Virus record (IMG/VR): IMGVR_UViG_3300009093_000035
Coordinates: 124,001 to 188,000 of that record
DNA length: 64,000 nucleotides
Strand: one strand, 5' to 3'
Position 1 is the first letter of the stretch; each line of letters begins with the position of its first letter. A program made the translations under genes and the position numbers. Shown here in pieces: positions 21,459 through 37,823 of this stretch. The notes beneath the pieces were generated by a model. It saw only the letters and a program-made list of their open reading frames with translations. It was not told the origin of the DNA and ran no database searches.

Positions 21459-22985
21459 TCAGCCGCCGAAGACCTTCGAGACGTCGGGGGACGTCTCCCA
21501 GAGCTTCGAGAGGTCCGCGATCTCGGCCGAAGCCGTACGCGAGTTCGAGGGAACCGAGCCGAGGGTGCGGGGACCGGTCGACGCGACGCGGGGCTGGGGC
21601 TTGACGGCGGCCTTCTTGGCCTCCTTCTTCGCCTCGTCCTCGTCGGACTTCTTCTCCTCGGCCTCGTCGTCCGCCTTCTTCTTCCCGGCGTAGCGACCAC
21701 CGTAGACGGCGGCCATCTCGTTCTCGCTGAGGCCACCCATCTCCGACGGGTCCATGAGAGCCATGGGGTCCTCGCCGAAGACGTCGTCCATCATCGGGTC
21801 CTCGTCCATGCCCGAGAGCATGTCGTTGACGTTGGCCTTCTTCTCCTCGCCCTCGGCCTCGTCCTCGGACTTCTTCTCTTCCTCGGCGTCGTCGTCGGCC
21901 TTCTTGGCCTCCTTCTTCGCCTCGTCGTCGTCCGAAGCCGTCTCCTCGTCGTCGTCGGCCTTCTTGGCCTCCTTCTTCTCGGAGTCGTCCTTCTTCTCGA
22001 AGGGGGGCGCCTTCTTCCCGCCGAAGGGCTCGTCCTTCTTCGCGGACTTGGCGGCCGAAGCCTTCTTCGACTCCTCCTCCATCATCTCCGCGAGCAGGGC
22101 TTCGTCCTCGTCCTCGTCTTCCGAGGCCTTCTTGTTCTTCCCGAGGTCCGAGCCCTCGTAGTTGTAGTGGGCGGGATCGTTCTGGTTGCCCGACGGAGCA
22201 GCGCGGCGACCCGAGGCCTTCTTCGCCTCCTTCTCGGTCTCCTCGTCCTCGTCCGCCTTCTTGGCTTCCTTCTCGGTCTCCTCTTCCTCTTCCTCGGCGG
22301 CCTTCTTCGCCTTCTTCGCGAAGTGGGCGGCGAGACGGGCGTACTTCGCAGCCTTCTTCGCCGCGACCTCCGCATCGTCCTCGTCTCCGTCCTCGTCGTC
22401 GGCCTTCTTGGCCTCCTTCTTGGACTCCTCTTCCTCTTCCTCGGCCTTCTTCGAAGCCGGGACCACGACGTCCTCGTCATCGACGATCATGTCGTCGGCG
22501 AGGAGATCGTCGGCCGAGCGCTCGGGCGTGAGCGTGTAGTTCGCGTCCTTCCCGCCGAGACGGGCGAGAGCGGCGGCGATCTGACGATCACCGAGCGACA
22601 TGAGGTCGAGGGCCTGGTCCTCGATCGCGTCCACGGACGCGTTCTTCGGAAGCATCGACGTCGCGATGCGGATGCACTTCGCGGCCTTCTGCGTCATCGC
22701 AGCGCGGAGCTGGCGGCTGGCCGCCTTCGACCCGCTCGGGAAGTAGTGGGCCGGATCCGTCGCCGGGTGACCCTGGGGCTCCTGCATGCCGGGGTCGGCC
22801 GGAGCGGGCGTGTTCGGGTAGGGACCCGGGTGCGGATCCTCGGCCCACGACGACGGATCGCCGTTCATGTACTTGTCCGCGTCCGGGTCGGGGCCGGGCC
22901 ACGCGGGGTGGTTGGTGCCTTCGGCGTAGCCCGGGGTAGCCGGGGGTGCAGAAGCCTTGCGATCGGTCGTTCGGCGGCGCGTCAT
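21459..22985 (-). CDS. Probable capsid scaffolding protein
   Basis: Between protease and capsid genes; acidic/Lys low-complexity EAKKADDE repeats. Confidence 0.7.
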   Translation of the reverse strand: MTRRRTTDRKASAPPATPGYAEGTNHPAWPGPDPDADKYMNGDPSSWAEDPHPGPYPNTPAPADPGMQEPQGHPATDPAHYFPSGSKAASRQLRAAMTQKAAKCIRIATSMLPKNASVDAIEDQALDLMSLGDRQIAAALARLGGKDANYTLTPERSADDLLADDMIVDDEDVVVPASKKAEEEEEESKKEAKKADDEDGDEDDAEVAAKKAAKYARLAAHFAKKAKKAAEEEEEETEKEAKKADEDEETEKEAKKASGRRAAPSGNQNDPAHYNYEGSDLGKNKKASEDEDEDEALLAEMMEEESKKASAAKSAKKDEPFGGKKAPPFEKKDDSEKKEAKKADDDEETASDDDEAKKEAKKADDDAEEEKKSEDEAEGEEKKANVNDMLSGMDEDPMMDDVFGEDPMALMDPSEMGGLSENEMAAVYGGRYAGKKKADDEAEEKKSDEDEAKKEAKKAAVKPQPRVASTGPRTLGSVPSNSRTASAEIADLSKLWETSPDVSKVFGG

Positions 22986-24427
22986 GTCAGTCTCTCCTTG
23001 TGGGCACGAGTTTCGGCGGTTCGCCGAGCGGTAGGAAGATCCGCCAACAGGGTTGCCAACCGAACCATCGTGTTGACTTCCTCGTTGGAGGGAGCGTGGC
23101 CGAGAGCTTTCTTCACGGCCTTCAAGAAATGAGCCGGTTCCCGATACAAATCTCGGGCTCCAACCTTTAGCGCAGCCCTATAGATTGAAACGGGAAGCAA
23201 AACGCCGATTTCCCGATTCAGGGTTGCAACACGGTTGATCAGTTCGACGTCCGAGGTAGACGTCGCCACCAGGGTACGGAGCGACGCCACGTAGGCGGCC
23301 CTCTTCCCGGCGAGGCGAGCCTGCTTCACGACGGTGTCATTCGGAGCGTCCGAAGGCGGCAGGACCTGGTCCTCGACCTTCTTCTTCGTCAACTCTTCCT
23401 TCAGCTGGTCCTTCACGCCGTCGAGGACGACCGACTTCAGCTCGTTCTCGATCCCACCCAGCGGGGACTCCGAGGGGCCCTTCTTCGGCGGAGCCATCTC
23501 CTCTTCTGGAGCGGCTTCCTCTTCCTCAGGAGCGTCCTCGAACCCGCCGGTGCGGGCGGCCTTCTTCCGGGCGTTCGGATCCGCGACCGGAGCCGGGGAG
23601 GCGAAGACCTTCTCGGCCGCCTTCTTCTTCCCGCTGTCGATCTCCACGACGTTTCGAGCGACGGCGCCCGTGAACGCGGGGGTCTCTACCCAGGAAGCCT
23701 CGACGAAGGTAACGCCGCCGGTCGGGTCGAGAGACTCGTCCCCACACAGCTCAGCGACCCGGTGCTTCCCACCGTTCTCGTCGTAGAAGACGTTGCCCTT
23801 CTCGTAGCGAATGTGATCGCAGAACTCGGTCTCGTCCGCCGCCCAGTGACCGCACTTTGTGCAGGTCGAGCCGTCGATCGAGCACCCCATCGAGAGAGTC
23901 GAAAGCTCCCCTGAGGCGATCTTCGCGCAGAGGTCTTCGTGCTTCCGGTCGTTCGCGACGAGGATGTCCACGTAGATCGAGTCGCCGACGTCGCGGGCTA
24001 CCGCATCGATGATGCGACCCTTCGAGAGCTTCTCGATCTGGACGTGCTCCACGAAGGAGTGTCCCCCGACGAAGGTCTTGTACGACTTCAGAAGGACCGG
24101 ACGGGCCCAGGAGTCGAGGTTGTTGTTGATGTACTTGTCGCAGGCGCTCTTGATCCGGAAGTTCGTCGTCTTCCGGACGATCTTCTTCCCGTCCTCCGTA
24201 GAGGAACCCAGCTTCGCCTTCGGGACCTTCTCGGTATCCACCGAGGCCACGATCGTAGCATGGGTGAGGAGGAACTTCTTCGGGTCGAAGTCCGACTGAA
24301 GGATCTTCGAGGCCTGGTCGATGATATCTCGCCCGGCCTTGAGCGAACCCGACGCCACCCTCACCCGGTCCCAGTCTCGGACGTGGGGAGTAACGTTGAT
24401 GCTACGGGCGTAGCGAAGGAAAGCCAT
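22982..24427 (-). CDS. Prohead (capsid maturation) protease
   Basis: NNNLDSW..YKTF..FVEH, SMGC (catalytic Ser), CTKCG..CDH zinc insert, FVEASWVETPAF. Confidence 0.85.
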   Translation of the reverse strand: MAFLRYARSINVTPHVRDWDRVRVASGSLKAGRDIIDQASKILQSDFDPKKFLLTHATIVASVDTEKVPKAKLGSSTEDGKKIVRKTTNFRIKSACDKYINNNLDSWARPVLLKSYKTFVGGHSFVEHVQIEKLSKGRIIDAVARDVGDSIYVDILVANDRKHEDLCAKIASGELSTLSMGCSIDGSTCTKCGHWAADETEFCDHIRYEKGNVFYDENGGKHRVAELCGDESLDPTGGVTFVEASWVETPAFTGAVARNVVEIDSGKKKAAEKVFASPAPVADPNARKKAARTGGFEDAPEEEEAAPEEEMAPPKKGPSESPLGGIENELKSVVLDGVKDQLKEELTKKKVEDQVLPPSDAPNDTVVKQARLAGKRAAYVASLRTLVATSTSDVELINRVATLNREIGVLLPVSIYRAALKVGARDLYREPAHFLKAVKKALGHAPSNEEVNTMVRLATLLADLPTARRTAETRAHKERLT

Positions 24428-25036
24428 TCAGGCCCCCTCAGCGCCGATGATGTCGCCTCGGCGGATCATGAAGAGACAGTCCCCACAGCAGTAGAGCTTC
24501 TCGTTCTTCCCGTCCTCGCGCTTGTAGATCACCTTTCGGAGTTCCACACCGTCGCAACGAGGACACGTCGGGACCCCCGAGTCCATCTCTCCCCGGTTCA
24601 TCCGGTACTTGCGGTCCGGAGAATCCCAGTAGAGGGCCTTCTTCACGAAGGCCTCGATCACTCGGTCGGTGCTCGCGTCGCGATACAGCTCGTCGTTCGT
24701 GAGGTCCTCTCGGACGTCCTTCGCGAGCGTATCCGGACCGCCGGAGACCGACACCGTCGGAGTCCCGCCTGGGATCGAGTCAGCCTGGAAGTCGGCGAAG
24801 TTCTCGAACGTGTCGGACTGGTCGATCACCAAGTCTTCCACCGGGTACCGAGTCGAACCGTACCCGAACTGGACATCCACCATGCCGATCGCAGGCCACA
24901 CGGCAATCACCGTCCCCCCTGCAGCGGGATTACCGCCAAGCATGGGGAACACCCTATCGCCCGGTGAGAACACCGAGGCGCGGGCTTGGTAGTCGACGTA
25001 GGTCGCCCTGCGATCGGACAAGGTGGTCTCCTTCAC
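24428..25036 (-). CDS. Head-cluster protein (SH3-like N-terminus, C-terminal zinc ribbon)
   Basis: PGDRV..GTVIAVWPAIGMVDVQF; CPRC...CGDC. Confidence 0.7.
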   Translation of the reverse strand: MKETTLSDRRATYVDYQARASVFSPGDRVFPMLGGNPAAGGTVIAVWPAIGMVDVQFGYGSTRYPVEDLVIDQSDTFENFADFQADSIPGGTPTVSVSGGPDTLAKDVREDLTNDELYRDASTDRVIEAFVKKALYWDSPDRKYRMNRGEMDSGVPTCPRCDGVELRKVIYKREDGKNEKLYCCGDCLFMIRRGDIIGAEGA

Positions 25037-25641
25037 TTCGAGTCGGCGAACAGACCGAAGAGCGAAGCCGTCTTCTTGGCCTCCTCCTCGTCGGAGGCGA
25101 CCTCCTCTTCGTCACCGTCGTCGTCGGCCTTCTTGGCCTCCTTCTTCGGCTCCTCTTCGGACTTCTTCTCGTCCTCTTCCTCGGCAGCCTTCTTCGCGGC
25201 AGCCTTGCGGTTCGCGAGGTCCCACTCCTTCAGCTGCTCGAAGGCGATGACGGCAGCCGTCTTCGCGATCAGCGAGGCGAGCTTCGGGTCGGCGCGATGA
25301 GCCGCCGCGTTCCCCGCGAGGCTTCCGCTCAGCTGCTTCTCGGCGAGCTGGGTGAACTTCGCCTGGGTGAAGTGGCCGTTCATGAACGGGTTGTTCGCGT
25401 CCATGATCATCGGACCGGGGACGCCCTCGCCGATCTGGGCGGGGTTGTAGTAGCCGGCCGTCTTCAGCCCGAAGTTCCGATCGATCGCCGCCGAGAGGAG
25501 ATCGCAGCGGTGCGCGAAATCCGCCGCGACCTTCGCGGGGATCCCGAGCGACACTGCGTGACTCTCGAAGAGAGACGCGATGTTGTCCAGGGAAGCGGTG
25601 ACACGACGAGCACCCATCATCGAAGCCTTACGCACGGTCAT
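25033..25641 (-). CDS. Head-cluster protein with scaffold-like acidic tail
   Basis: GGAGG SD; KKEAKKADDD stretch like the scaffold; several KxA motifs. Confidence 0.75.
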   Translation of the reverse strand: MTVRKASMMGARRVTASLDNIASLFESHAVSLGIPAKVAADFAHRCDLLSAAIDRNFGLKTAGYYNPAQIGEGVPGPMIMDANNPFMNGHFTQAKFTQLAEKQLSGSLAGNAAAHRADPKLASLIAKTAAVIAFEQLKEWDLANRKAAAKKAAEEEDEKKSEEEPKKEAKKADDDGDEEEVASDEEEAKKTASLFGLFADSK

Positions 25642-25737
25642 GAATTCCTCCAGGTGTAGGCTCGTTGAAGGGGTCGGAGCCTTGGTTGGGTGCTACAGTA
25701 CACCCTACCTTCTCGCCCCCGCAATAAGCAAACTATC

Positions 25738-28700
25738 CTACCAATTCCACTCCAGGGACGAAGTCTTGTTGGAAGACCCCGTATCGATGTCCAAATCCAC
25801 CAAGTCCCCGATCGCATCCTGTACCTGGGACTCGTAAGGAGCCTTCTCTTCCGACTCGGACGAATCGCCCGGACCGGAGAAATCGGTGGGCTTCGACCTC
25901 GAAGGAGCCTTCTCCCGACGCATCTCGGTAAGAGGCTCTCTCTCGGAAGCCGCGTCTTCTACAGCTACGTTCGTGAGAAGCTCGGTGAAGACGTCGTGAG
26001 CGTTGCGGACGCGCTCCCGCTGAGACGCCTTCAATCCAGAGAAGGGCCAGACGTAGTCGGCCTCATCCTCAGAGTCTTCCCCGTCGTAGATCTTCCGCCA
26101 AGACGCCGCGAGCTTCCCGCTCGGGTCTACCGCCTCCAGCGCCTTCTCCATCTGCTCCGGTTGAAGCTTCCGGACCATGTCAGAGACGACTTCGGCAGAA
26201 GGCTCGGAACCGGGAACTCCCAACCCGGCCTCAATCATGTCGGAGACGTCTACACCGCTCTCCTTCAAAGACCGAAGCATCGTCCTCGTCCCCGTAGGAA
26301 TCGAAGACTCTGAGTCGTCGTCGCCCTCTAGGGCCGACGAAAGCTCCAAGGCTCGATGGTCGGCGGCGAGGTACCCCATCCGGTTCCGGAGCTGTTCCAG
26401 TTCCTTCTGGTCCGCCTCGCGCTCTTCGGGAGACTGGGGCGCTCCGCTGTTGGAGGAGAGCTTCTCTTCGAGGTCCGAGATCTTGTCCTGAGTATCCGTT
26501 CGAACCCGGGCGAAGGTCTTCTTCGTCTCAGCCCGATCGTCCGGAGACATCCCATCGAACCGCTCGACCGTCTTCGAGGTTCGCTCCTTCACCCCGGCCT
26601 TATCGATCGGAGACGAGGTGTCTCCGATGTAGGTCATCGGGTTACGGGCTGCCTCAGCCGTAGCCGCATGAACGAAGAACTTCGAGAAGCTCGACTGGAG
26701 TTCCTTCTCCACCTGGTCGCGCTTCTCGGTGAGCTGGAGGATCCGATCACCTTGGGTCTTCGCGAAGCTCCGCTTCAACCCCTCGATCTCGTCGTTGAGG
26801 TCTTCGTACTTCGACTTCAGCTTCTCGATCTTCTCTGGGGACGGGGGCTTCTTCGTCGAAGGGGAGTTCCCCGCGGCCATCCTACCGATCGCTTCGTCGC
26901 GATCTGCCGTCAGCTTCTCTACGAACTTCTCGGCGTCCTCGGTCGTCATCTGCTCGGTCAGAGAATCGAGCGTCGACTTCACGAAACGTGAGTCCTCCTT
27001 CGAGAAAGCCGGGGAGTCCTTCACGGACTGGGCCTTCTGATGGATCTCCGAGCGGCGGCGCTTATCCAGCTCCTCCGCCTCGTCCCTCTTGTACTGAGCC
27101 TCTTCCTCAGCGTCCGCGTCCTCTTGCTGCTTCTTCGGGTCGGGAGGCGCCTCCCCGGACTCAGGCTTCGGTTCTGGCTTTGGGGGCTTCGGAGGAAGGC
27201 CCTTCAGATCTCTCTTCCGGGCCTCTTCCTGCTCGCGCTTCTTCTTCCGAAGCTTGTCTTCCTTCGAGCCCTCTTCTTCGAACTCCTTCGCCTTCTCGGC
27301 CCACTCGGCGCGGATCCGCTTCTGTTCCTCGTCCGGGAGACTCTGGAACTTCACGTCTTTGTTGGTCTCTTTGTTGTGGAAGGTCTTCCCCTCCACGGAC
27401 TCCAGGAATTCGTCATCCTCTTCTGAGTCCAAGGCCAACAAGTACCGAGAGGCCACGCGACTCGGGGCCGTCATGAAGTAGGCCATCGCTACTCGAAGGG
27501 CGACCTTCTTGTAGTTCAGGGAGAGATCGTCGTCGGTGGCGTCGAGGTCCTTGTCCCCCGAGTCCACCCGGTGGTTCTGGAGATCTTTCCGAGGGGGCTT
27601 CTTCTTCGGCTCCGGCTTCAGAAGAGCTTCCGTCGCCTCGTCTTCCTTCTCTGCTTCGGTCTTCGTGGCGGACTTCGACTCCTTGAAGGAAGAGAGGATC
27701 GTCCCATCCTTCATGAAGGCGTCTTCGAGACCGGGGACCAGGTAGTCCGAACGAAGGGTCGCCTTCTCGTGGCCGACGATGTCCGCGACCTCTTCGAGGG
27801 CGTCCGCGAACTCCTTCTTCAGGATCTTGTCCCGCTCCTTCCGAGCGCGTGGGAGATCCGGGCCCTCTTTCCGCTGTTCGCGGAGGGCCTTGCACATCTC
27901 CTGATTCGCTCGGAGCCCGCGGATGTCCTTCGCGGTGATGTCGAACTCGCTGAGGTAGTCGTTCACCGCCTCCGGCTTCACCGTGTAGTCGTCCCGGCTG
28001 AGCAGGCAATCGTCGCCCTTCTTCCCCTCAGCCAGCTCCTTCAGGAGCTTCACGACCGGAGCCGACTCGACCACCTTCTCGTGCTTCACGCCGGACTTTC
28101 CGACGTACTTCAGGGTCGCTTTCGACCCAGAGAACGAGATGTGCTTCTTACGCCACCCCGTCACCCCGTAGTGGCCTTCTTCGGCCGACCCCTCATTCCC
28201 TACCCGCTCGCACGTCTCGTCCATCAGAGCGGCGGCGAGGGCGGGGAGAGCTACCTTCGGGTCCTTCGAAGAGATGTCCTTCTTGATCATCTTCCGAAGG
28301 TCGCTGAGGTCCTTCCGAAGACGTTCGATCCGTTCGGCCTTCTCCGAGTGCCGGTTCGCTACCTGGCGATCGCTGTACTCGTAGTGGACATTCCCCTCGT
28401 CGTCCTTCGTCTTGGACTTGTACCGAGCCGCTACGACAACGGCCGAGGCCAGTCTCGCGGAAAGGGGCGGGGGACAATCGACGTCATGACGAGCGACCGT
28501 AACCAGGTGGGGGACGCAAGACCTACCGTTCGACTCGATCCAGTCGGCGAACGTGCGTAGGTGGCCCAGGCGGTCTTCCCAGATCGCCACGCCTCGGATC
28601 GAAGGCTGCTTCGAGAGGATCTTCTTGATCGTCTCCAGCTTGAATCTCTCGGTATCCGTGTCTCCGGGGGACAGGTAGATCTCCTGGAAGTCGAGACCGG

Positions 28701-28974
28701 CCTGGCGAAGGAGCTGACGGATCCGAAGCGAGAACTTCTGGACTCGACCCGTGAGAAGGATCGTCCGAACCTCTACGTTCTCCAACGACTGCTTCGCGCG
28801 CTCGACGACCGATTCGTTCCACCAATCGATCGTGGGCTCCTCCGGCACGCAAGGCGTCGAGAGGGAGTTGAGGTCGCCCCACCACTCCGCCCCTTCTTTC
28901 CACCAGATGGGAGGCTCCGGACTCTTGAAGAGAGTCCCATCGAAGTCGTAGACGTGAAGCTTGATAGGCCTCAT
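25738..28974 (-). CDS. Fusion of HAD phosphatase (Swiss-army-knife RNA-repair type), DNA topoisomerase IB core and a long acidic helical region
   Basis: HAD: YDFDGTLF, LLTGR, K, WEDR. TopIB pentad: ERVGNE, VGKSG, KDIRG, VGHE, RSDYL. Confidence 0.85.
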   Translation of the reverse strand: MRPIKLHVYDFDGTLFKSPEPPIWWKEGAEWWGDLNSLSTPCVPEEPTIDWWNESVVERAKQSLENVEVRTILLTGRVQKFSLRIRQLLRQAGLDFQEIYLSPGDTDTERFKLETIKKILSKQPSIRGVAIWEDRLGHLRTFADWIESNGRSCVPHLVTVARHDVDCPPPLSARLASAVVVAARYKSKTKDDEGNVHYEYSDRQVANRHSEKAERIERLRKDLSDLRKMIKKDISSKDPKVALPALAAALMDETCERVGNEGSAEEGHYGVTGWRKKHISFSGSKATLKYVGKSGVKHEKVVESAPVVKLLKELAEGKKGDDCLLSRDDYTVKPEAVNDYLSEFDITAKDIRGLRANQEMCKALREQRKEGPDLPRARKERDKILKKEFADALEEVADIVGHEKATLRSDYLVPGLEDAFMKDGTILSSFKESKSATKTEAEKEDEATEALLKPEPKKKPPRKDLQNHRVDSGDKDLDATDDDLSLNYKKVALRVAMAYFMTAPSRVASRYLLALDSEEDDEFLESVEGKTFHNKETNKDVKFQSLPDEEQKRIRAEWAEKAKEFEEEGSKEDKLRKKKREQEEARKRDLKGLPPKPPKPEPKPESGEAPPDPKKQQEDADAEEEAQYKRDEAEELDKRRRSEIHQKAQSVKDSPAFSKEDSRFVKSTLDSLTEQMTTEDAEKFVEKLTADRDEAIGRMAAGNSPSTKKPPSPEKIEKLKSKYEDLNDEIEGLKRSFAKTQGDRILQLTEKRDQVEKELQSSFSKFFVHAATAEAARNPMTYIGDTSSPIDKAGVKERTSKTVERFDGMSPDDRAETKKTFARVRTDTQDKISDLEEKLSSNSGAPQSPEEREADQKELEQLRNRMGYLAADHRALELSSALEGDDDSESSIPTGTRTMLRSLKESGVDVSDMIEAGLGVPGSEPSAEVVSDMVRKLQPEQMEKALEAVDPSGKLAASWRKIYDGEDSEDEADYVWPFSGLKASQRERVRNAHDVFTELLTNVAVEDAASEREPLTEMRREKAPSRSKPTDFSGPGDSSESEEKAPYESQVQDAIGDLVDLDIDTGSSNKTSSLEWNW

Positions 28975-29491: not shown

Positions 29492-31273
29492 TTAGAACCG
29501 ACTCTCTTCCTTATCCGTGGGCTTCGTGTACTTCAGGTTGAGCCTCTTCGCGAGGATCTCGTTGAAGTCGCTGTTCTCGACGAGCTGACGCCCCGCTTCC
29601 CCGTACATCGTTCCGATCAGGTCGTTGAACTTCGAGTCGTTCACCGTGAACATGTCTCGGGTCAACTTCTCCTTCGTCGAGTGGGGGTCGATGTTGAGAA
29701 GTTCGAGGATGATGTCGATGTCGAGGGAGCCCTTCTGGTAGAGGTTGAAGAGCGCGTCGAAGGTGTCGGCGTTGTCTCGAAGCGCGAGACGCGTGAACGA
29801 GAGACCGGGAACGATGATGTTCTCGTTCCCGTCGTCGTCCTCCTCGACGAAGCCCATGCGCTTACACATCGGCTTCAGGAGATTGTTCTCGATCATGTCC
29901 TGAAGGATCTCTCGGAGGAGCATGTACCGAGTGTTGATCACTTCGAGGTTGATTCGGTCGCCGGAGTAGCTCGACTCACCGGAGAGGAGTGACTCGGTCA
30001 CGCCGAGACCCGCGTACATCTGACGATCCGTCATCTCGTACTCGCCCGAGAGTTCGAGGAGGCGCTGCTGGCTCCCCATCTCTTCCCAGTGGAGTTCGAA
30101 GTTCGTGATGATCGAGTAGTCCGGGTCCATGAGGGCCAGGTCGACCTGCTCGCGGATCGCGTCCACGTCGGCGATGCTGGCGTCTTCGGCCCAGATCACC
30201 CGGATCGGGGTCATGTGACGAGAGGCGATAGACGTCTGAGCCTGGCGGAGCTTGTCGCGGTAGACGAGGATCCGAAGGCACCGCTCCAGGAGCGAGTGGC
30301 CGCGGGGCTCGTACTGAGACTTCTTCCGGGCCATGTAGTAGACGAAGGACCCGGCGTCCGGATTCGTGTTCAGGGGGATGTTCTGGCCGCTGCGGATCGA
30401 CTCCACGACCGACGGGGGCATCGACTCCACAACCCGTTGCGCGTGCTCGTCTCCGGAGTCGGCCCTCTGAATCACGTCCTTCGTCTTCGAGTCCGCGATC
30501 AGCTCGATCAGCTTCTCGTCCGTGAAGGGGAAGCCCTCCATGTGGACCTGTTCCGGAGGAAGGACGCGAAGGGCGGTCCAGCCCTTGTAGTTCTTCCGGA
30601 GCCAGCGACTCGTCCTCTCGGCCCAGTCGGATCGACGCCGCTTCTCCTCGACTGGATGGCCGGAAACGTCGATCTCCCGGATCATCTCGAACTCGATGTC
30701 TTCGGGCATGTCCGGGGAGTTGTCCTCCGCGAACACGTAGACCTCGCCCAGAAGGTTGTACTCGTGGACGATCTCGATCAGACGATGGAGGAGCCCGATC
30801 TCCTTCGCCCACTTCGTACAGAAGTTCAGCGAGGCCTCGGCGATGTCCCTGTTCTTCGCCTCGGGCTTCCGGAGACGGATCTTCGAGAGAGGAAGCTCCG
30901 TGTGGAGATCGACAGCCTGGCCTACGAACGGATCCGCCCCATAGAAGAAGCGGTAGTAGTTCCGCTTCTCGTCCGCCGATTGGGGTAGTTCGAGGAAGTC
31001 GGTCGAAAGCTCGGGGCTGTAGAAGTTACCCCCGCTCGCCGACGCGACACCGCCCGTAGCCGGGAAAGCAACCTTGGAGCGGAGGGCGCTCGTGATCACT
31101 CGCTTCGGAGGACCCGTTTCTACGTTCGCCTTCTTCGCGATCCGTCGGACCTCGACCGCCTCCTGAGACTCCCGAGTCGTGCGGCGATTGTCGGCCGCCA
31201 CGACCTTCCCCTTTTTGGGGATCCGTCGGACTTCCAATCCGTCCTGATTCTGGGTCTGCTTACGAGTAGGCAT
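29492..31273 (-). CDS. Portal protein
   Basis: 593 aa downstream of TerL; RFFY..DPFVGQAVDLHTELPLS, RGHSLLERC, GLGV...LSGESSYS. Confidence 0.85.
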   Translation of the reverse strand: MPTRKQTQNQDGLEVRRIPKKGKVVAADNRRTTRESQEAVEVRRIAKKANVETGPPKRVITSALRSKVAFPATGGVASASGGNFYSPELSTDFLELPQSADEKRNYYRFFYGADPFVGQAVDLHTELPLSKIRLRKPEAKNRDIAEASLNFCTKWAKEIGLLHRLIEIVHEYNLLGEVYVFAEDNSPDMPEDIEFEMIREIDVSGHPVEEKRRRSDWAERTSRWLRKNYKGWTALRVLPPEQVHMEGFPFTDEKLIELIADSKTKDVIQRADSGDEHAQRVVESMPPSVVESIRSGQNIPLNTNPDAGSFVYYMARKKSQYEPRGHSLLERCLRILVYRDKLRQAQTSIASRHMTPIRVIWAEDASIADVDAIREQVDLALMDPDYSIITNFELHWEEMGSQQRLLELSGEYEMTDRQMYAGLGVTESLLSGESSYSGDRINLEVINTRYMLLREILQDMIENNLLKPMCKRMGFVEEDDDGNENIIVPGLSFTRLALRDNADTFDALFNLYQKGSLDIDIILELLNIDPHSTKEKLTRDMFTVNDSKFNDLIGTMYGEAGRQLVENSDFNEILAKRLNLKYTKPTDKEESRF

Positions 31274-31677: not shown

Positions 31678-31694
31678 AGACCCCTACTGTACCT

Positions 31695-31949
31695 TCAATC
31701 CCAAGAGGGAGTCTTCGTCAGGTACCCGTTCTTGTAGGCTATCTTGATGATCTTCTTCAGGAGCCGGACCTGGTCGATGTCTCCGTCGAAGACCCCCTCC
31801 CAGCTTCCTTCAGCGCGATCGAAGACCCGAACAATCAGGTCGTACTCCTCCGGAAGATGGACGACCTTGTACATCGCCTCCAGGATCTTCTTGATGATCC
31901 TGTAGTCGGCTCTCACCGGTACCAACGGGTCGTTCTTCGCAGTCTTCAC
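31695..31949 (-). CDS. Hypothetical protein
   Basis: GTGA overlap with the TerL stop. Confidence 0.6.
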   Translation of the reverse strand: MKTAKNDPLVPVRADYRIIKKILEAMYKVVHLPEEYDLIVRVFDRAEGSWEGVFDGDIDQVRLLKKIIKIAYKNGYLTKTPSWD

Positions 31950-33793
31950 CGAATCGGCCTTCCCCTACCCAAAGACACTCCGCGAGGAACCATCCGAGAT
32001 TCGACGCTTCCGCTTCTCAGGAGTCTCCGACGAGAGAGCCCTACGTTAGAGCCGAACCCTGACGAACTACCGAGAGGGAGCCCGGTTCGGGTGAGATGGG
32101 GTTGTTTCAGGAGGCGATTCGAGGCGAGCCACACCATTCGGACGAGAGCGTCCGACATGTCGTCGTGCTTCCCTTCGATGTTTGGGGCTTCGACTGTAGT
32201 GATGTACTTCGAGTGATACCGGGCCTGGAGTTCGAGAAGCTCCTTGATGTAGGCGCAGTGCTCTTCGTGGGCTTCCTTCGGCCAGTCGTAGAGACCTAGC
32301 CGGTTGTCCCACAACATCGACTTGAAGTTCTGGAAGATCTGGGACGTCAACGGCTTCGTCATGACGACCGACTTCAGCTGGGTGAGACCCCGCTTCTTCA
32401 GCGCCTGTTCGAAGGGGATACCAGTCCACTGGTCGAAGATCCCGTCGATCACATAGAACTTGTTACACCACTCCTTCACCCAATCGGCTACGTCGTCGAA
32501 GTCGAGGCGATCCACATCCTCGTACTTCCCTTCACCAGCCTTGATCTGATCGACCATATCGACCAAGATCTTCCCCTTCTCATCGATGTGGCCGAGCGAG
32601 ATCGCCGTCGCGTCTCCCTTGAGCGCCAAGTCGATTCCCATGAAGTAGGGACGACGGGGCATCCCTCGAACCTGGGGTCGGAGAACAGGGTTGATACACT
32701 TCGTGAGGTCGGTCTTGTCTTCGATCCAACCGCGAGTACGGTCCGTGAACTCGCCGCCGTACTCCGTGAAGAAGACCGTGGAGTCCTTCAAGTAGTGCTT
32801 CTCGAACTCCGTCGCCGGAATCGTCGGGTTCACTTCCCAGGTCGGAGCCTGGATACAGAGCATGGTGTCGGAGACCGAGCCTCCGCCCATACCCATCTGG
32901 AAGAGCTTGTAGAACAAGCCCTGACGACCCAAAGGGGACGAGATCAGGATCACGCGGGCTTCGACCGACCCGATAGAGACTCGCGAGTTCGTCGGATCCT
33001 TCGGCGAGAAAGCCGAGGTCGAGGGGACGACGGCGTTGTAGACGGCGTCGGCCGAGGATTGGCCAGCGTCGGTGAAGTGGGCCACCTCGTCGAGGATGAC
33101 AACGATGTTACCGGAACCACGAAGACCCTTCGCGATACAGGACCGGAAGGTGACTCGGATCGAGGCCTTCGCGTTCTTGTTCTCTGAGTAGGGGCCGTAC
33201 TTCTCAACGTCCTTCGGCGACTGGAATCGCGCGTAAGACATCGTGTTGTTCGCCATGTACGGCATGAAGAAGTCGCAGTTACGGAAGTGGCCGGAGACCT
33301 CCTGGTAGAGGATGCCCGCCTGGTCCTTGTCCGTAGCGACCGAGATCAGCTGGATAGCGTTCGAGGGAGGGAGACCGTAGTAGGCCTGGGGGTCACCCTT
33401 CGAAATCAGCTTGTAGGTCTCGTAGGCAGCGATACAGGCCGAGATCGTGGTCTTACCGGAGCGGCGGCCGATCGAAAGGATCATCTCCCGCCGGTCGTGG
33501 CCAGCGGTCACCTCTTTGATCGAGGAGCGACCCTCTTTGAAGAGGTACTCCAGGTACTCCTTCTCCGTGAACTCCAGGAACTTCTGACGGCGCCAGTCGG
33601 AGATCTTGAACTTGACCTTGTCGTCTAGCTCGATCCCGTAATGGGCCTTCAGGATGACCTTTTGGACCGGGAAGAGCTTCATGTTGAGCCCCCAGGGCTC
33701 TTCGATGAACTCGATCGGTCCTACGACCTGTTTCTTCTTGGTAATCGAGGAAACGGCACGAGCGCCCGCGAGGGCTATGTTTCCCAGACTCAA
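31946..33793 (-). CDS. terL: Terminase large subunit
   Basis: Q motif PVQ, Walker A GRRSGKT, Walker B VVILDE, ISSP coupling motif, nuclease GIDLA and HDDMSDA. Confidence 0.95.
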   Translation of the reverse strand: MSLGNIALAGARAVSSITKKKQVVGPIEFIEEPWGLNMKLFPVQKVILKAHYGIELDDKVKFKISDWRRQKFLEFTEKEYLEYLFKEGRSSIKEVTAGHDRREMILSIGRRSGKTTISACIAAYETYKLISKGDPQAYYGLPPSNAIQLISVATDKDQAGILYQEVSGHFRNCDFFMPYMANNTMSYARFQSPKDVEKYGPYSENKNAKASIRVTFRSCIAKGLRGSGNIVVILDEVAHFTDAGQSSADAVYNAVVPSTSAFSPKDPTNSRVSIGSVEARVILISSPLGRQGLFYKLFQMGMGGGSVSDTMLCIQAPTWEVNPTIPATEFEKHYLKDSTVFFTEYGGEFTDRTRGWIEDKTDLTKCINPVLRPQVRGMPRRPYFMGIDLALKGDATAISLGHIDEKGKILVDMVDQIKAGEGKYEDVDRLDFDDVADWVKEWCNKFYVIDGIFDQWTGIPFEQALKKRGLTQLKSVVMTKPLTSQIFQNFKSMLWDNRLGLYDWPKEAHEEHCAYIKELLELQARYHSKYITTVEAPNIEGKHDDMSDALVRMVWLASNRLLKQPHLTRTGLPLGSSSGFGSNVGLSRRRLLRSGSVESRMVPRGVSLGRGRPIR

Positions 33794-33797
33794 GAGA

Positions 33798-34541: not shown

Positions 34542-34588
34542 AGAGGTTCTTGTACTCTACCTCACTTGGAGGCAGACCCCACAGACTC

Positions 34589-35227: not shown

Positions 35228-35229
35228 GA

Positions 35230-37227
35230 TCACTCCTCGTCGTCGAGGACGAAGCCCTCGAACAAGACCTCTCCGAGATCCTCCGGCGGAGGAACGTTGT
35301 CGTAGGTGATGTCGTCGAGGTTGTCGTTCTGGAGTCGATACTCCTGCTCGTCGAACGAAGCGGCGTAGAGGGACGCCGTGCGGTCGTCCGTGTTCGCCAG
35401 ACGAATCATCTCTTCCTGGTACCGGGCCGCCTGCTTCTCGGGGACCGAGGCGATGATCGTCTTGTTGTACTTCTGGCACGTGTCGTCCACGTTCGAAGCA
35501 CACGACCCGCACCGACTCATGCCGAGAACGGCCTTGATGGCGTTCGCGCGGTGGACGAGAGCCCCCTTATCGCATCCACTCGTCCCCTCGGGGGACGCGT
35601 AGGCGCTCGCTTCGACGTAGAGGTGTCCCGAGAGACCCTCATGCTTCTTCCGAAGCTGGACGAGGGGTTCGCTCGCCTTCTTCAGGAGGTCCGCGGCGAA
35701 GCGAGCCTTCAGGCGCGCGTCGAGGTCCCGGCCCGCCTCCCCTTCCGTCATAGCGACGGAGGCCCAGCGAAGAAGTCGACGGACCTCCATGGGCTGGGAG
35801 AGTTCCGCCTGTTCGGCGGCCGAGATCTTGGAAGCCTGCTTCATCGACTGAGCCGGCTCGTAGACGGGGCCGGTGTAGCCCTTCGTCTGGGAGATGTTCG
35901 CGGTCACGGCCTCGGCCGCCGTTCGATAGAGTTCGAACGGATCCGAGATCCGGGCCTTCATCTCCAGAGCCTTCTTCGTCGTGAGGAGACCGGCGCGGAC
36001 CCAACGGTCGATCCGAGCGTCCGCCTTCTTCCGAAGACCTTCCGCCGCCGTCTTCGTCTTCACGATGACCCGAGCGTTCTGAGCCGCCGCGAGACCTTCC
36101 CGAGCTTCCTTCTCGGAGGCGACGGGGGCGACGTACGTCGGGAACAGAGTCGCCGCGCGAGTCTGTTCCTCCTGGTTCAGGAAGGCCACCTTCAGAGCCT
36201 TCCGAGGATCTCCCGAGGCGAGCTTCCGCCCTGCCGCCGAGAGAACCGATCGGTAGTGACTCGCGGCCTCGTCCCACGGGATCGAGGTGACGACCTTCTT
36301 CCCGAGGTAGTTCTCGTAGGAAGAGAGCTTCGAGCCCGGGGTCGTGAGGAAGTAGCGCGCCGAGGCGCAGCGCTTCCGGATCGCCGAGTCCCACTTCCCC
36401 GAAGTGATCGAGGGGAAAGCCGAGTCTCGAACGAAGACGTTCCCCGAGAGCCCGTGCTCCGCTCGGATCATCCGAACCGCCGAAGCCGTCCGCTGAAGGA
36501 CCGGGTGATCGAGGGTGTGCCCCTTCGCCAGGTACGGGTCGATTGCCGCCTTCACATCCCCAAGGATGGAAGAGAGGTCCGCCCCGAAAGCCGAGCGCCG
36601 CATCGCGTGAGCCACGATGTCCCGGAACTGATCTCCGGGAAGCTCCGAGACGGGAGGGAGAACCGGGCGGGGGTACTCGACGTTCGGGACGAGGTTCTGA
36701 CCGTCCGTACGACGATTCACGCCCCACGCCTGTGCCAACTCCTGGCGCGTCCCAGATTCGGGATCGTCCTCGACCACCGTCTGGTTCAGCTCGTTCCGGT
36801 ACTTCTCGAAGAGGTTGACGCTCTCGGGAAGGCGGGCCGGATCTTGGGTCGCGGACTCCAGCCAGTTCAGGTTGGGGAGCTGACTTCGAGCCGCCCACCC
36901 GGCCTCCTTCGAGACCCCTTCCTCTTCCATGAGATCTCCGAGATCCATGGACTCTTCGTCGGCAGTCGTAGAGAGCATCCCCACATCGAAGTTCGCGGAA
37001 GGCGGGTTCTCGACGCCCGCGAACCCGTCCGGAAGTCCGGACAGACCGCGCGTCGAACGAGGCATGTCGACCCCTAGCTCGCGCTGGGAACGGGGCTGGC
37101 TGGTGGTCTTCTCGGCTGCGTCCACGCCATCTCCGTATTCCGAGTCGAAATCGAAACCATCCATCATGTAGTTGGACCCGAGAGTCGGGACCCACCCGCC
37201 GTCAGGCAACTGTGAAGACTTCGTCAT
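35230..37227 (-). CDS. Large putative head/core protein, rich in (K/R)xA motifs
   Basis: Start MTKSS at 37227 (ATGA overlap); Cys cluster near the C-terminus. Confidence 0.7.
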   Translation of the reverse strand: MTKSSQLPDGGWVPTLGSNYMMDGFDFDSEYGDGVDAAEKTTSQPRSQRELGVDMPRSTRGLSGLPDGFAGVENPPSANFDVGMLSTTADEESMDLGDLMEEEGVSKEAGWAARSQLPNLNWLESATQDPARLPESVNLFEKYRNELNQTVVEDDPESGTRQELAQAWGVNRRTDGQNLVPNVEYPRPVLPPVSELPGDQFRDIVAHAMRRSAFGADLSSILGDVKAAIDPYLAKGHTLDHPVLQRTASAVRMIRAEHGLSGNVFVRDSAFPSITSGKWDSAIRKRCASARYFLTTPGSKLSSYENYLGKKVVTSIPWDEAASHYRSVLSAAGRKLASGDPRKALKVAFLNQEEQTRAATLFPTYVAPVASEKEAREGLAAAQNARVIVKTKTAAEGLRKKADARIDRWVRAGLLTTKKALEMKARISDPFELYRTAAEAVTANISQTKGYTGPVYEPAQSMKQASKISAAEQAELSQPMEVRRLLRWASVAMTEGEAGRDLDARLKARFAADLLKKASEPLVQLRKKHEGLSGHLYVEASAYASPEGTSGCDKGALVHRANAIKAVLGMSRCGSCASNVDDTCQKYNKTIIASVPEKQAARYQEEMIRLANTDDRTASLYAASFDEQEYRLQNDNLDDITYDNVPPPEDLGEVLFEGFVLDDEE

Positions 37228-37823
37228 TCGCGACCTCGCCTCATGGCAGCTCGTACGAACGCCCGCTTCGTGAGTTGGTCGTTCTCCTCGTCCATCTCTT
37301 CTTCTTGTTCTTCGGCCCAACCCTCAGGGTCAGCCTTGATGTCGAGGGCGTCCTCGACGATCTGCTCCACTTCCTCGCGGTCTTCCGGATCTTCCTGACG
37401 CGAGATAGCCGCCCAGTGGGGAGCGCGGATCTCGTCGTAGAGGGTATCCGACAGAGCGGAGAGGGACTCCACGATGTTCATGTAGGCTCGCCGCATCTCG
37501 GCGATCTTCTGGATGTAGCCCTTCCCTCCCAACGACCCGTCGGGGGAGATGTCCGCGGACTTCAACTTCGCGAAGACCGTGTAAGCAGCCATGGCGTACC
37601 CCATGGCCGAGTTCGTTGAGCGAAGAACCTTCGCGAGAGGCTTCGTGTTCTTCGGGTCGAAGGCGAAGTCCTGGGTGATCTTCCGTTCCTGGGGACCAGC
37701 GTCGTTCCACGCCCACTGAGAGGCGTCGTTCGACTTATCCTTGATGAAACGGACCTCGCCCGCCGTGCGCATCATCGCACGCTTCGCTACGCGGGAAGGA
37801 TCGGGCCTACGACTCATGGTCAT
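37224..37823 (-). CDS. Hypothetical late-operon protein
   Basis: 199 aa, ATGA-coupled. Confidence 0.7.
   Translation of the reverse strand: MTMSRRPDPSRVAKRAMMRTAGEVRFIKDKSNDASQWAWNDAGPQERKITQDFAFDPKNTKPLAKVLRSTNSAMGYAMAAYTVFAKLKSADISPDGSLGGKGYIQKIAEMRRAYMNIVESLSALSDTLYDEIRAPHWAAISRQEDPEDREEVEQIVEDALDIKADPEGWAEEQEEEMDEENDQLTKRAFVRAAMRRGRE

What the first reader, a model, noticed from the sequence alone, without database searches (positions are those of the whole stretch)
21459..37823. Pervasive (K/R)-x-A motifs in head-cluster and tagged proteins suggest the protease site and polyprotein-style cargo
Seen: many KKA copies plus RKAS, SKAAS and RTAS in the scaffold; KKAARTG and KQARLA after the protease domain; RKAS, KTAG, KTAA, KTAS in 25033..25641; KEAG, RTAS, KLAS, KTAA, KQAS, KKAS in 35230..37227; RTAG in 37224..37823; RLAS and KSAT at the domain boundaries of the HAD-TopIB fusion; KRA and KKAS between modules of 554..1807; KKAS near the N-terminus of 1..551. 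Inference: cleavage after (K/R)xA, analogous to the Glu-specific sites of T4 gp21 and phiKZ gp175, would destroy the scaffold and release multi-domain cargo as separate effectors.
Basis: partly seen in the sequence, partly recalled or inferred. Interest (0 to 1): 0.75.

Follow-up and report, generated by a model that had tools for sequence, protein, structure and literature searches.

The report
Candidate head-protease cleavage motif K/R-x-A
In this huge-phage fragment a short motif, Lys/Arg-any-Ala usually followed by Ser, Ala or Gly, is over-represented in four head-assembly proteins and follows the address tags of about a dozen tagged proteins; it is most likely the untested cutting site of the phage's head-maturation protease.

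Summary
After composition correction [KR].A / [KR].A[SAG] / [KR].AS are 1.6 / 2.7 / 4.5 times expectation in the head cluster and 1.0 in the other 265 predicted proteins.

The excess sits in four proteins: the putative scaffold, the C-terminal half of the protease, gp25033-25641 and gp35230-37227. Portal, TerL, MCP and the HAD-TopIB fusion are not enriched. The 15 KKA copies in the scaffold share DNA-level repeats, so they are not independent.

The stronger evidence is comparative:
- In 19 relatives, [KR]-x-A-S sites keep K/R, A and S while x varies.
- In 149 diverse homologues of the protease, the same island follows the protease domain.
- 34 of 42 copies of a 27-aa 'IRLAH' tag are followed within 0-2 residues by K-x-A.
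- Two cargo domains carry K-x-A-[S/A/G] at their N-terminal boundary in different architectures.
- Distant phages with this protease family (Tunturi_5, phage G) show the same bias.

The protease has the herpesvirus-assemblin / T4 gp21 fold. Cleavage was not shown and no N-terminomics exists for this family. P1 Ala resembles herpesvirus sites rather than the Glu sites of T4 and phiKZ.

The parts
22982..24427 (-). Head maturation protease, 481 aa. Protease domain about aa 40-268, variable acidic/Pro linker, helical C-terminal domain about aa 320-480.
   Evidence: phrog_18299 'head maturation protease' E 5e-16 over aa 106-263. AF2 model of aa 40-275 has pLDDT 92.5. VIA-align Z 10.6-6.7 to herpesvirus assemblins and Z 9.8 to T4 gp21 5jbl. 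The gene lies between portal and scaffold. The C-terminal helices come from the whole-protein model, where only aa 380-480 reach pLDDT about 80 or more.
23552..23566 (-). K288-K289-A290-A291-R292: conserved [KR]-x-A island in the otherwise variable linker after the protease domain. Candidate self-release site.
   Evidence: In 149 family representatives the aligned columns read K100/R35, A94, A140, S66/A20/R18/K12, flanked by variable columns. K289, A290 and A291 are invariant or nearly so in the close relatives.
21459..22985 (-). Putative scaffold, 508 aa, with a K/E/D/A-rich repeat core. Named from its position between protease and MCP and from its composition; it has no family match.
   Evidence: [KR].A 40 vs 12.7 expected, [KR].AS 8 vs 0.85. 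No Pfam or PHROG hit. 19 orthologues adjacent to the protease gene in relatives.
22950..22961 (-). Scaffold N-terminal site RKAS (aa 9-12), followed by the conserved block APPATPGY.
   Evidence: 15 of 17 orthologues keep [KR].A. The middle residue varies (K, T, Q, M, G, N). The following residue is S in 16 of 17.
22716..22730 (-). Scaffold site SKAAS (aa 86-90), K-x-A-S before the conserved helix 'RQLRAAM'.
   Evidence: All 17 orthologues keep [KR].A. The middle residue is Q, A, E, S or R. The next residue is S in 16 of 17.
22635..22646 (-). Scaffold site KNAS (aa 114-117), before 'VDAIEDQALD'.
   Evidence: 16 of 17 orthologues keep it. The middle residue is K, N, S, D or G. The next residue is S in 16 of 17.
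21528..21590 (-). Scaffold C-terminal sites RVAS (aa 466-469) and RTAS (aa 483-486). RTAS lies 23 residues from the C-terminus, upstream of the conserved tail 'DLSKLWE..PDVSK.FG'.
   Evidence: Orthologues read R-[KRLV]-A-S-[TN]-G and K-[VT]-A-[SGA] at these two places. The position resembles a herpesvirus M site (PMC4498786).
21897..22451 (-). Acidic repeat core of the scaffold, holding most of the 15 KKA copies ('KEAKKAD'-type units).
   Evidence: The DNA repeats are 80-95% alike, with one more copy in the gp25033 gene. In relatives the unit is K-[ES]-A-[KSA]-K-K-S-E, so K-x-A persists while the rest changes.
25033..25641 (-). gp25033-25641, 202 aa head-module protein of unknown role, with sites RKAS (aa 4), KTAG (60), KLAS (120) and KTAS (190, before the C-terminal 'LFGLF').
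   Evidence: [KR].A[SAG] 9 vs 1.6. In 12 orthologues the N-terminal K-[KMR]-A-[ST] is kept in 12 of 12, KLAS 12 of 12, and the C-terminal K-[TS]-A-S in 11 of 12.
35230..37227 (-). gp35230-37227, 665 aa protein of unknown function with eight [KR].A[ST] sites.
   Evidence: [KR].A[ST] 8 vs 1.3. In 4 orthologues RCAS, K/R-[LI]-AS and R-[WY]-AS are kept in all, and RTAS in 3-4. Several sites lie in well-conserved blocks, so accessibility is unknown.
20258..20269 (-). KTAS at aa 19-22 of the major capsid protein (19445-20323, 292 aa).
   Evidence: K-[TS]-A-[AS] is present in 16 of 17 relatives including Tunturi_5. The whole protein is 91-96% identical among close relatives, so this conservation says little.
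25738..28974 (-). HAD-TopIB fusion, 1078 aa, with RLAS (aa 174; 28444-28455), KSAT (aa 434; 27664-27675) and RVAS (aa 506; 27448-27459).
   Evidence: Pfam HAD_SAK_1 aa 29-153 and Topoisom_I aa 208-406. No overall enrichment: 11 vs 15.2. Relatives carry R-V-A-A before 'RYKSKK', K-x-A-T after the TopIB core and a KKVAS / RVAS-R-Y block. Three orthologues end shortly after that block.
2355..2438 (-). N-terminal 'IRLAH' tag of gp1809-2447 (aa 4-26) followed by K-A-A-A.
17340..17426 (-). N-terminal 'IRLAH' tag of gp16908-17435, followed by RQAS (aa 29-32).
1049..1534 (-). Multi-module protein 554-1807: KRA (aa 92-94), internal tag (aa 98-125), middle module, KKAS (aa 250-253), then the C-terminal 'PLYGHT' domain.
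   Evidence: The C-terminal domain (aa 250-417) is 60% identical to a relative's protein (L036) in which it directly follows tag plus KQAA. The alignment starts at the K of the motif in both proteins.
62934..63029 (-). Internal 'IRLAH' tag of gp62496-64115 (aa 363-394), flanked by R-M-A before and K-E-A-A after.

Best explanation
[KR]-x-A followed by Ser, Ala or Gly is the recognition motif of the head-maturation protease encoded at 22982-24427, an assemblin-fold protease. Cleavage is most likely after the Ala.

Proposed course inside the procapsid:
1. The protease frees its own catalytic domain at the conserved K-A-A island about 45 residues after the domain.
2. It detaches the scaffold from the shell by cutting R-T-A|S 23 residues from the scaffold C-terminus. 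It also trims the scaffold at RKA|S, KAA|S, KNA|S and RVA|S, and breaks the acidic repeat core at its many K-x-A units.
3. It trims gp25033 at both ends and cuts gp35230.
4. It removes a 27-aa 'IRLAH' address tag from about a dozen proteins, and separates the modules of multi-module proteins.

Shown here: the enrichment, its confinement to these proteins, the conservation pattern, the position at tags and module boundaries, the protease fold, and the same bias in distant phages with this protease family.

Inferred: that the motif is cleaved at all, the scissile bond, that this protease does it, and that the tagged proteins are capsid cargo.
For: 1. Enrichment that is specific to certain proteins. 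Head cluster O/E is 1.63 / 2.70 / 4.53 against 1.03 / 1.04 / 1.00 in 265 other proteins. In the four enriched proteins [KR].A has z 11, whereas [LIV].E, [SAG].E, A.A, [DE].A and [KR].[GS] have O/E 0.56-0.86. The excess survives a dipeptide-aware expectation.

2. A short-linear-motif signature. K/R, A and S are kept with a free middle residue at scaffold aa 9, 87, 114 and 466, and at gp25033 aa 4 and 190.

3. In 149 diverse protease homologues, K/R (135), A (140) and S/A (86) form an island in a variable linker.

4. Of 42 distinct tags, 34 are followed by [KR].A at offset 0, 1 or 2, so the motif is not in fixed register with the tag. P2 is E, T, A, S, Q, K, I or D. Internal tags also have the motif upstream.

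5. Two cargo domains keep K-x-A-[SAG] at their N-terminal edge, whether they follow a tag or another module.

6. Distant relatives show the same bias. Tunturi_5 gp332 has 20 vs 7.7 and 'DNA ejection protein' gp328 has 14 vs 3.3 for [KR].A[SAG], while 13 neighbouring proteins have O/E 0.91 / 0.77. Phage G protease gp19 has 10 vs 3.4, with KVAS and KIAS after the domain. Gordonia phage Pupper protease-scaffold fusion has 29 vs 18.9.

7. The protease fold matches assemblins and T4 gp21. Herpesvirus assemblins cut after Ala at an R site behind the protease domain and at an M site near the scaffold C-terminus (PMC4498786). Prohead proteases of giant phages use tripeptide motifs, remove propeptides, and cleave their own C-terminus (PMC10052503).
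Against: - There are no cleavage data for this phage or for any member of this protease family.
- Bare [KR].A is not retained better than control patterns across orthologues, and [KR].A[ST] sites as a class are only modestly better.
- Several gp35230 sites, and RLAT near the protease C-terminus, lie in conserved and probably folded or helical segments. Such sites may be inaccessible.
- The N-terminal sites would remove only 6-11 residues.
- Many scaffold copies arise from repeat duplication. In several relatives' scaffold cores K.A is not the top-ranked pattern; KK, A.K and K.S score similarly.
- P1' is heterogeneous: S in head proteins, A or G after tags, R/K/F after some protease domains.
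- The substrate pocket was not analysed.
Confidence: 0.55

Rival explanations
1. The motif is a non-cleaved docking element. [KR]-x-A-S caps an amphipathic helix, as in K-x-A-S-x(0-3)-R-V-A-x-R-F/Y, and that helix binds the scaffold, the inner capsid surface or the protease. It would then serve as an address or assembly contact rather than a cut site.
For: - The composite pattern [KR].AS.{0,3}R[VIM] occurs 13 times against 1.8 expected genome-wide.
- It lies at C-termini or between domains of several proteins.
- It marks the TopIB boundaries in relatives.
- Several gp35230 sites sit in conserved blocks.
- The scaffold's own most conserved helix starts with K-x-A-S.
Against: - It does not explain K-x-A-[AG] directly after the tags with variable register.
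- It does not explain the isolated island in the disordered linker after the protease domain in 149 homologues.
- It does not explain the sites in acidic or Pro-rich linkers of Tunturi_5 gp328.
- Docking and cleavage are not exclusive: herpesvirus and T4 substrates combine both.
Confidence: 0.2
2. There is no dedicated function. The excess is a by-product of K/E/A-rich low-complexity helices, recent repeat duplication, and ordinary conservation of helical segments.
For: - DNA-level repeats underlie the scaffold KKA copies.
- KK, A.K and K.S score about as high as K.A in the scaffold cores of relatives.
- Overall retention of [KR].A equals that of control patterns.
Against: - O/E is 1.0 in 265 other proteins.
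- The enrichment remains without the scaffold: [KR].AS 18 vs 4.9.
- It remains under a Markov model.
- The middle residue is free while the flanking positions are fixed.
- The motif sits at module boundaries.
- It recurs in AT-rich phage G and in Tunturi_5, but only in particular proteins.
Confidence: 0.12
3. The sites are Ser phosphorylation sites for a basophilic (R/K-x-x-S) protein kinase of the phage or the host.
For: R/K at position -3 relative to Ser is the classic basophilic kinase pattern. RRAS and RKAS occur in scaffold orthologues.
Against: - Ala at -1 is invariant, which kinases do not require.
- After tags the following residue is A (15) or G (9) far more often than S (3).
- After protease domains it is often A, R or K.
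- No Pkinase domain is found on the contig, though the record is only about 56% complete.
Confidence: 0.04

Closest known systems
Herpesvirus assemblin (MEROPS S21) with its release (R) and maturational (M) sites
   Same: - Same fold (Z up to 10.6).
- Cleavage after Ala with Ser or Thr at P1', e.g. YLQA-T and VQA-S in pseudorabies virus (PMC4498786).
- One site just behind the protease domain. Another lies a few tens of residues from the scaffold C-terminus and frees the scaffold from the major capsid protein. The candidate sites here sit in both places: protease aa 289-292, and scaffold RTAS 23 aa from the end.
   Different: - P3 here is Lys/Arg rather than a hydrophobic residue.
- Protease and scaffold are separate adjacent genes, not nested in-frame products.
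- The motif occurs many times per scaffold and on tagged proteins.
- A Cys-rich insert lies in the protease domain.
- Cleavage is not shown.
T4 gp21 (L/I-x-E) and phiKZ gp175 / SPN3US gp245 (S/A/G-x-E, A-x-E) prohead proteases
   Same: - Related fold (T4 gp21 Z 9.8).
- A tripeptide motif with fixed P3 and P1 and a free P2.
- Many copies in core, scaffold and ejection proteins.
- Removal of N-terminal propeptides and self-cleavage of the protease C-terminus (PMC10052503).
   Different: - P1 would be Ala, not Glu. Glu-type motifs are not enriched here.
- The protein matches neither Pfam Peptidase_S77 nor S78.
T4 capsid targeting sequence of the internal proteins (own knowledge)
   Same: A short N-terminal peptide shared by otherwise unrelated proteins and followed directly by the protease motif.
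   Different: - The tag here is 27 aa long and highly conserved, with 8-12 copies per genome.
- It can be internal or C-terminal.
- Its role in capsid targeting is untested.
Head maturation proteases of Tunturiibacter phage Tunturi_5 (gp331), Bacillus phage G (gp19) and cluster C mycobacteriophages / Gordonia phage Pupper (gp94)
   Same: Sequence relatives at 25-40% identity, with the same gene neighbourhood. The [KR].A bias is seen in their scaffold-position, ejection or protease proteins.
   Different: - They lack the IRLAH tag: tblastn finds it only in LR745208.1.
- No cleavage specificity has been published for them.

Membership tests
Assemblin-fold capsid maturation serine proteases (herpesvirus S21, T4 gp21 S77, HK97 gp4 S78) | Assemblin / prohead-protease fold | tested here: met
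   AF2 pLDDT 92.5. The top 37 VIA-align entries are all herpesvirus proteases or T4 gp21, Z 10.6-6.7. Unrelated folds start at about Z 6.3. Foldseek probability is 0.93 to 5jbl, though the E-value is weak at 0.014.
Assemblin-fold capsid maturation serine proteases | Conserved Ser and His catalytic residues | tested here: inconclusive
   H56, H128 and S179 are invariant in 81 sequences, and H163 nearly so. Many homologues are interrupted next to aa 126-128 and 181-182, which may be intein insertions at the active site. Residues were not mapped onto a solved active site.
Assemblin-fold capsid maturation serine proteases | Match to curated family models | tested here: not met
   No Pfam hit. Peptidase_S78 and Peptidase_S77 are not found on the contig. 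No PDB sequence match. Only PHROG 18299 'head maturation protease' matches, E 5e-16.
Assemblin-fold capsid maturation serine proteases | Gene placed between portal and scaffold / major capsid protein | tested here: met
   The gene order is portal 29492-31273, protease, scaffold, MCP 19445-20323. The order is the same in Tunturi_5 and phage G.
Glu-specific tripeptide cleavage systems (T4 L/I-x-E; phiKZ/SPN3US S/A/G-x-E) | Motif with fixed P3 and P1 and free P2, over-represented in scaffold, core or ejection proteins only | tested here: met
Glu-specific tripeptide cleavage systems | Glu at P1 | tested here: not met
   [LIV].E has O/E 0.77 and [SAG].E 0.86 in the four enriched proteins. The conserved residue is Ala.
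Glu-specific tripeptide cleavage systems | Cleavage shown by mass spectrometry or N-terminal sequencing | not testable with these tools
   No proteomic N-termini exist for this phage or for its protease family.
Herpesvirus R/M-site logic | Ala at P1 and Ser/Thr at P1' | tested here: inconclusive
   The motif has an invariant Ala followed mostly by Ser in head proteins. The scissile bond is unknown, and P1' is A or G after tags.
Herpesvirus R/M-site logic | One site behind the protease domain and one near the scaffold C-terminus | tested here: met
   Met as motif positions only: the island about 45 aa after the domain, and scaffold K/R-[VT]-A-S about 23-25 aa from the C-terminus in all relatives.
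Herpesvirus R/M-site logic | Hydrophobic P3/P4, and protease and scaffold made as nested in-frame products | tested here: not met
   P3 is K/R. The protease and scaffold genes are separate and overlap by 4 nt.
T4-type capsid targeting sequence | Shared short peptide on unrelated proteins, directly followed by the protease motif | tested here: met
   12 tags in this contig and 8-11 in each of 5 relatives. 34 of 42 are followed by [KR].A within 0-2 aa.
T4-type capsid targeting sequence | Directs the protein into the procapsid and is removed there | not testable with these tools
   No virion proteome is available.

The most novel reading that the evidence does not exclude
A widespread lineage of huge soil and freshwater phages (relatives of phage G, Tunturi_5 and LR745208.1) may mature its capsid with a herpesvirus-like 'cut after Ala' logic. 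This would include counterparts of the release and maturational sites. The same K/R-x-A cut would strip a conserved 27-aa address tag, and a second R-V-A-S-R-F/Y helix, from a dozen or more enzymes (topoisomerase IB, HAD and 2H phosphoesterases, pyrophosphatase-like and unknown domains). These enzymes would be loaded into the head as fused modules and released as separate proteins for ejection into the host.
Probability: 0.3. Interest if true: 0.75.

Novelty: new variant of a known kind. Interest (0 to 1): 0.6.

Why it matters
Cleavage motifs of head proteases are known for only a few model phages, all cited here with Glu at P1, and for herpesviruses, with Ala at P1.

A K/R-x-A motif in a large, mostly uncultivated phage lineage would have three uses:
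- It would give a sequence rule for predicting mature virion proteins, propeptides and packaged cargo directly from metagenomic genomes. More than 1,800 representative homologues of this protease exist.
- It would link phage and herpesvirus maturation at the level of substrate logic as well as fold.
- It would make the 'IRLAH' tag testable as a capsid address. Such a tag could be used to load foreign proteins into phage heads.

If the motif proves to be only a docking element, it still marks a set of proteins that are co-assembled with the head.

Tried and rejected
- Whole-protein AF2 model of the protease from 11 sequences: pLDDT 47 in the protease domain, unusable. It was replaced by a domain model from 81 sequences.
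- Profile search of PDB sequences: only chance hits.
- Column-by-column retention of [KR].A and [KR].A[ST] across orthologue alignments: no clear excess over control patterns. This is partly because the variable linkers misalign. For example, scaffold RTAS scored 0 although every relative has K-[VT]-A-S there. I therefore relied on site-by-site reading, on the anchored tail alignment of 149 proteases and on tag-anchored counts.
- MCP N-terminal KTAS: uninformative, because the whole protein is 91-96% identical.
- Literature: the Tunturi virus paper has no proteomics or protease data. The phage G multi-omics paper used fully tryptic searches and reports no cleavage sites.
- Kinase hypothesis: no Pkinase domain on the contig.
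- T4-like, phiKZ-like and signal-peptidase-like motifs: not enriched.
- Pfam on ten tagged or motif-rich proteins: no family covers the tag.
- The group 'KxAS..RV proteins outside the head cluster' was selected by the motif itself, so I did not use it as evidence.

Full report
**Context**

The window is bases 124001-188000 of a single 248,579-bp virus contig, which CheckV rates about 56% complete. It has 61% G+C and nearly all genes lie on the minus strand.

The region in question is a head-morphogenesis module:
- TerL, 31946-33793
- portal, 29492-31273
- a HAD-topoisomerase IB fusion, 25738-28974
- two small proteins, 25033-25641 and 24428-25036
- a head maturation protease, 22982-24427
- a K/E/D/A-rich putative scaffold, 21459-22985
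- a 226-aa protein
- the major capsid protein, 19445-20323

The nearest records are an unannotated 485-kb 'uncultured phage' LR745208.1 (protease 51% identical, portal 70%) and the Acidobacteriota jumbo phage Tunturi_5 (about 40%). Phage G and the cluster C mycobacteriophage / Gordonia phage proteases are more distant at 25-29%.

**Checking the observation**

I called genes on the whole contig and compared observed counts with shuffles of each protein:

| Protein set | [KR].A obs vs exp (O/E) | [KR].A[SAG] obs vs exp (O/E) | [KR].AS obs vs exp (O/E) |
|---|---|---|---|
| Head cluster | 132 vs 81 (1.63) | 53 vs 19.7 (2.70) | 26 vs 5.7 (4.53) |
| Remaining 265 proteins | (1.03) | (1.04) | (1.00) |

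The excess is not general to the head cluster, however. It lies in the scaffold (40 vs 12.7), gp35230-37227 (22 vs 9.9), the protease (18 vs 8.1) and gp25033-25641 (12 vs 5.1). Portal, TerL, MCP, HAD-TopIB and the rest together are at expectation.

The excess survives a first-order Markov expectation that keeps dipeptide frequencies. It is also specific. In the same four proteins the T4-type [LIV].E, the phiKZ-type [SAG].E, A.A, [DE].A and [KR].[GS] are all at or below expectation. An unbiased scan of all three-residue gapped patterns in the proteome ranks KKA first among patterns that are not Cys or Pro motifs.

One caveat applies to the scaffold. Its 15 KKA copies sit in 'KEAKKAD'-like units whose DNA is repeated at 80-95% identity, with one more copy in the gp25033 gene. 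They are therefore not independent.

**Comparative evidence**

A scan of IMG/VR gave 19 related loci with protease, scaffold and neighbours. The scaffolds are only 40-70% identical, yet five places keep K/R, Ala and Ser while the residue between them changes freely:
- the N-terminal RKAS, before 'APPATPGY'
- K-x-A-S before the helix 'RQLRAAM'
- K/R-x-A-S before 'V..EDQALDLM'
- R-x-A-S-T/N-G
- K-[VT]-A-S about 23-25 residues from the C-terminus, upstream of the invariant tail

gp25033 keeps K-x-A-S/T at residues 4-7, KLAS, and K-[TS]-A-S just before its C-terminal 'LFGLF'. gp35230 keeps RCAS, K/R-[LI]-A-S, R-[WY]-A-S and mostly RTAS in four orthologues.

The acidic repeat units differ between relatives (K-E-A-K-K-S-E, K-S-A-S-K-K-S-E and so on) but keep K-x-A. 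In those cores KK, A.K and K.S score similarly, so the repeats are weak evidence on their own.

Averaged over all occurrences, bare [KR].A is retained no better than control patterns. The informative unit is [KR]-x-A-[S>A>G] at particular places.

**The protease and its own tail**

An exhaustive HMMER search found 1,842 representative homologues of the protease domain, 300 of them below 1e-30. I aligned the 75 residues that follow the domain in 149 of them. The alignment shows one island in an otherwise variable linker: K100/R35, A94, A140, then S66/A20/R18/K12. This corresponds to K289-A290-A291-R292 of the window protein. It is the position at which T4-like, phiKZ-like and herpesvirus proteases free themselves from their C-terminal part.

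A domain model built from 81 sequences reached pLDDT 92.5. Its best structural matches are exclusively herpesvirus assemblins (Z up to 10.6) and T4 gp21 (Z 9.8) before unrelated folds appear near Z 6. The Foldseek E-values alone are weak. The protein matches no Pfam protease family. It is therefore a separate sequence family with the assemblin fold. His56, His128 and Ser179 are invariant, but I did not map them onto a solved active site.

**The tags**

The pattern scan also exposed a 27-residue peptide, approximately 'LRS..IRLAH.KPELR..LLPLL'. It is present in 12 proteins of the contig, mostly at the N-terminus and three times internally. Each of five related genomes holds 8-11 copies. No Pfam family covers it, and among deposited phages only LR745208.1 has it.

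Among 42 distinct copies, 34 are followed by K/R-x-A at offset 0, 1 or 2 from the end of the tag:
- P3 is K in 31 and R in 3.
- P2 is E, T, A, S, Q, K, I or D.
- P1' is A in 15, G in 9 and S in 3.

The shifting register argues that the motif is a separate element rather than the end of the tag helix. Internal tags also carry the motif on their upstream side: K-R-A, R-M-A, K-E-A-S, and K-F-A-A-Q-K-V-A-A.

**Module boundaries**

Two cases of domain shuffling bear on the 'polyprotein' idea.
- The C-terminal domain of window protein 554-1807 (aa 250-417) is 60% identical to a relative's protein in which it directly follows tag plus KQAA. In the window protein it follows a different module plus KKAS. 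The alignment begins at the K of the motif in both.
- A second domain follows tag plus KEAA in this contig, but follows K-F-A-S-D-K-E-A-G after an extra module in a relative.

The family does carry R-V-A-A just before the TopIB part, K-x-A-T after it, and a KKVAS / RVAS-R-Y block. Three orthologues end shortly after that block. In some relatives a 2H-phosphoesterase-like domain replaces the HAD domain.

A composite pattern, K/R-x-A-S followed within three residues by R-[VIM], occurs 13 times against 1.8 expected. It often lies at C-termini or between domains. It may be a second address or docking helix.

**Distant relatives**

- In Tunturi_5 the protein in the scaffold position (gp332) has 20 [KR].A against 7.7 expected.
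- The annotated 'DNA ejection protein' gp328 of Tunturi_5 has 14 [KR].A[SAG] against 3.3, mostly in acidic or Pro-rich linkers. Thirteen other proteins of the same locus have O/E 0.91 and 0.77.
- In AT-rich phage G the protease gp19 has 10 against 3.4, including KVAS and KIAS behind the domain.
- The protease-scaffold fusion of Gordonia phage Pupper has 29 against 18.9.

**Interpretation**

The most economical reading is that K/R-x-A, usually followed by Ser, Ala or Gly, is the substrate motif of this protease family. It would be used to release the protease, to detach and fragment the scaffold, to trim accessory head proteins, and to remove tags and separate cargo modules.

It is the herpesvirus assemblin, which cuts after Ala at a release site behind the protease and at a maturational site near the scaffold C-terminus (PMC4498786). 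The candidate sites here occupy both positions.

Three things remain inference: that any of these sites is cut, where exactly, and whether the tagged proteins are in the capsid. No proteomic N-termini exist for the family.

Rivals:
- A non-cleaved docking motif. This is compatible with part of the data and is not exclusive of cleavage.
- A compositional or repeat artefact. This fits poorly, given O/E of 1.0 elsewhere and a free P2 between fixed flanks.
- Phosphorylation. This fits poorly, given the invariant Ala and the frequent A or G in place of Ser.

**Verdict**

This is a new specificity variant of a known kind of system. It is of moderate to high interest because it gives a testable rule for a large uncultivated phage lineage and exposes a candidate capsid address tag.

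Noticed in passing
window 2355-2438, 17340-17426, 1433-1516, 62934-63029 (all minus strand); further copies elsewhere on the contig (L022, L024, L026): A conserved 27-aa peptide, approximately 'LRS..IRLAH.KPELR..LLPLL', heads 12 otherwise unrelated proteins. Each of five related genomes holds 8-11 copies. No Pfam family covers it, and among deposited phages only LR745208.1 has it. It is a candidate address tag.
   Followed up: partly
window 27448-27459 (RVAS in HAD-TopIB); contig genes at 16184-17731, 118664-120763, 207548-209638 and 205278-205841 (L023, L025, L026): A second recurring element, K/R-x-A-S followed within 0-3 residues by R-[VIM]-A-x-R-F/Y, occurs 13 times against 1.8 expected. 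It is often at C-termini or between domains. Some TopIB orthologues end right after it.
   Followed up: partly
L019, L020, L021 (protease ORFs of 918-920 aa); many representatives: Many homologues of the protease are 600-1850 aa long and match the domain in 2-4 separate stretches. The breaks recur next to window residues about 102, 126-128 and 181-182, beside the invariant His128 and Ser179-Met-Gly-Cys182. This looks like one to three inteins inserted at the active site.
   Followed up: no
L009, L010, L019, L021 compared with window 28500-28974: In several relatives the domain fused upstream of topoisomerase IB is not the HAD phosphatase. It is a domain with two H-x-T-L motifs, resembling a 2H phosphoesterase. 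L009 carries both domains.
   Followed up: no
L049, L053, L054: In three loci from relatives the tag lies at the very C-terminus of a long ORF, ending 'LLPLLKR' or 'KK' immediately before a stop codon. The search tool flagged two of these as TGA stops inside the match.
   Followed up: no
window 23800-23890 (protease aa 182-205): An invariant Cys cluster (C182, C189, C192, C203, with H194/H205) is inserted in the protease domain. It resembles a small zinc ribbon and is absent from T4 gp21 and the assemblins as far as I recall.
   Followed up: no
window 19445-20323 compared with 21459-22985: Across the same 17-19 relatives the major capsid protein is 91-96% identical, whereas the adjacent scaffold is only 40-70% identical over partial alignments.
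   Followed up: no
window 2467-5029, minus strand: By eye, two adjacent genes look like NAD salvage enzymes: a nicotinamide phosphoribosyltransferase-like protein at 3620-5029 and a nucleotidyltransferase-like protein at 2467-3636. This was not checked with any tool.
   Followed up: no
window 37224-37823: The start codon is ambiguous. With the later start, RTAG would lie at residues 3-6.
   Followed up: no
window 24428-25036: A small head-module protein has a C-terminal four-Cys motif (CPRC ... CCGDC) and is conserved in 16 relatives. Its function is unknown.
   Followed up: no
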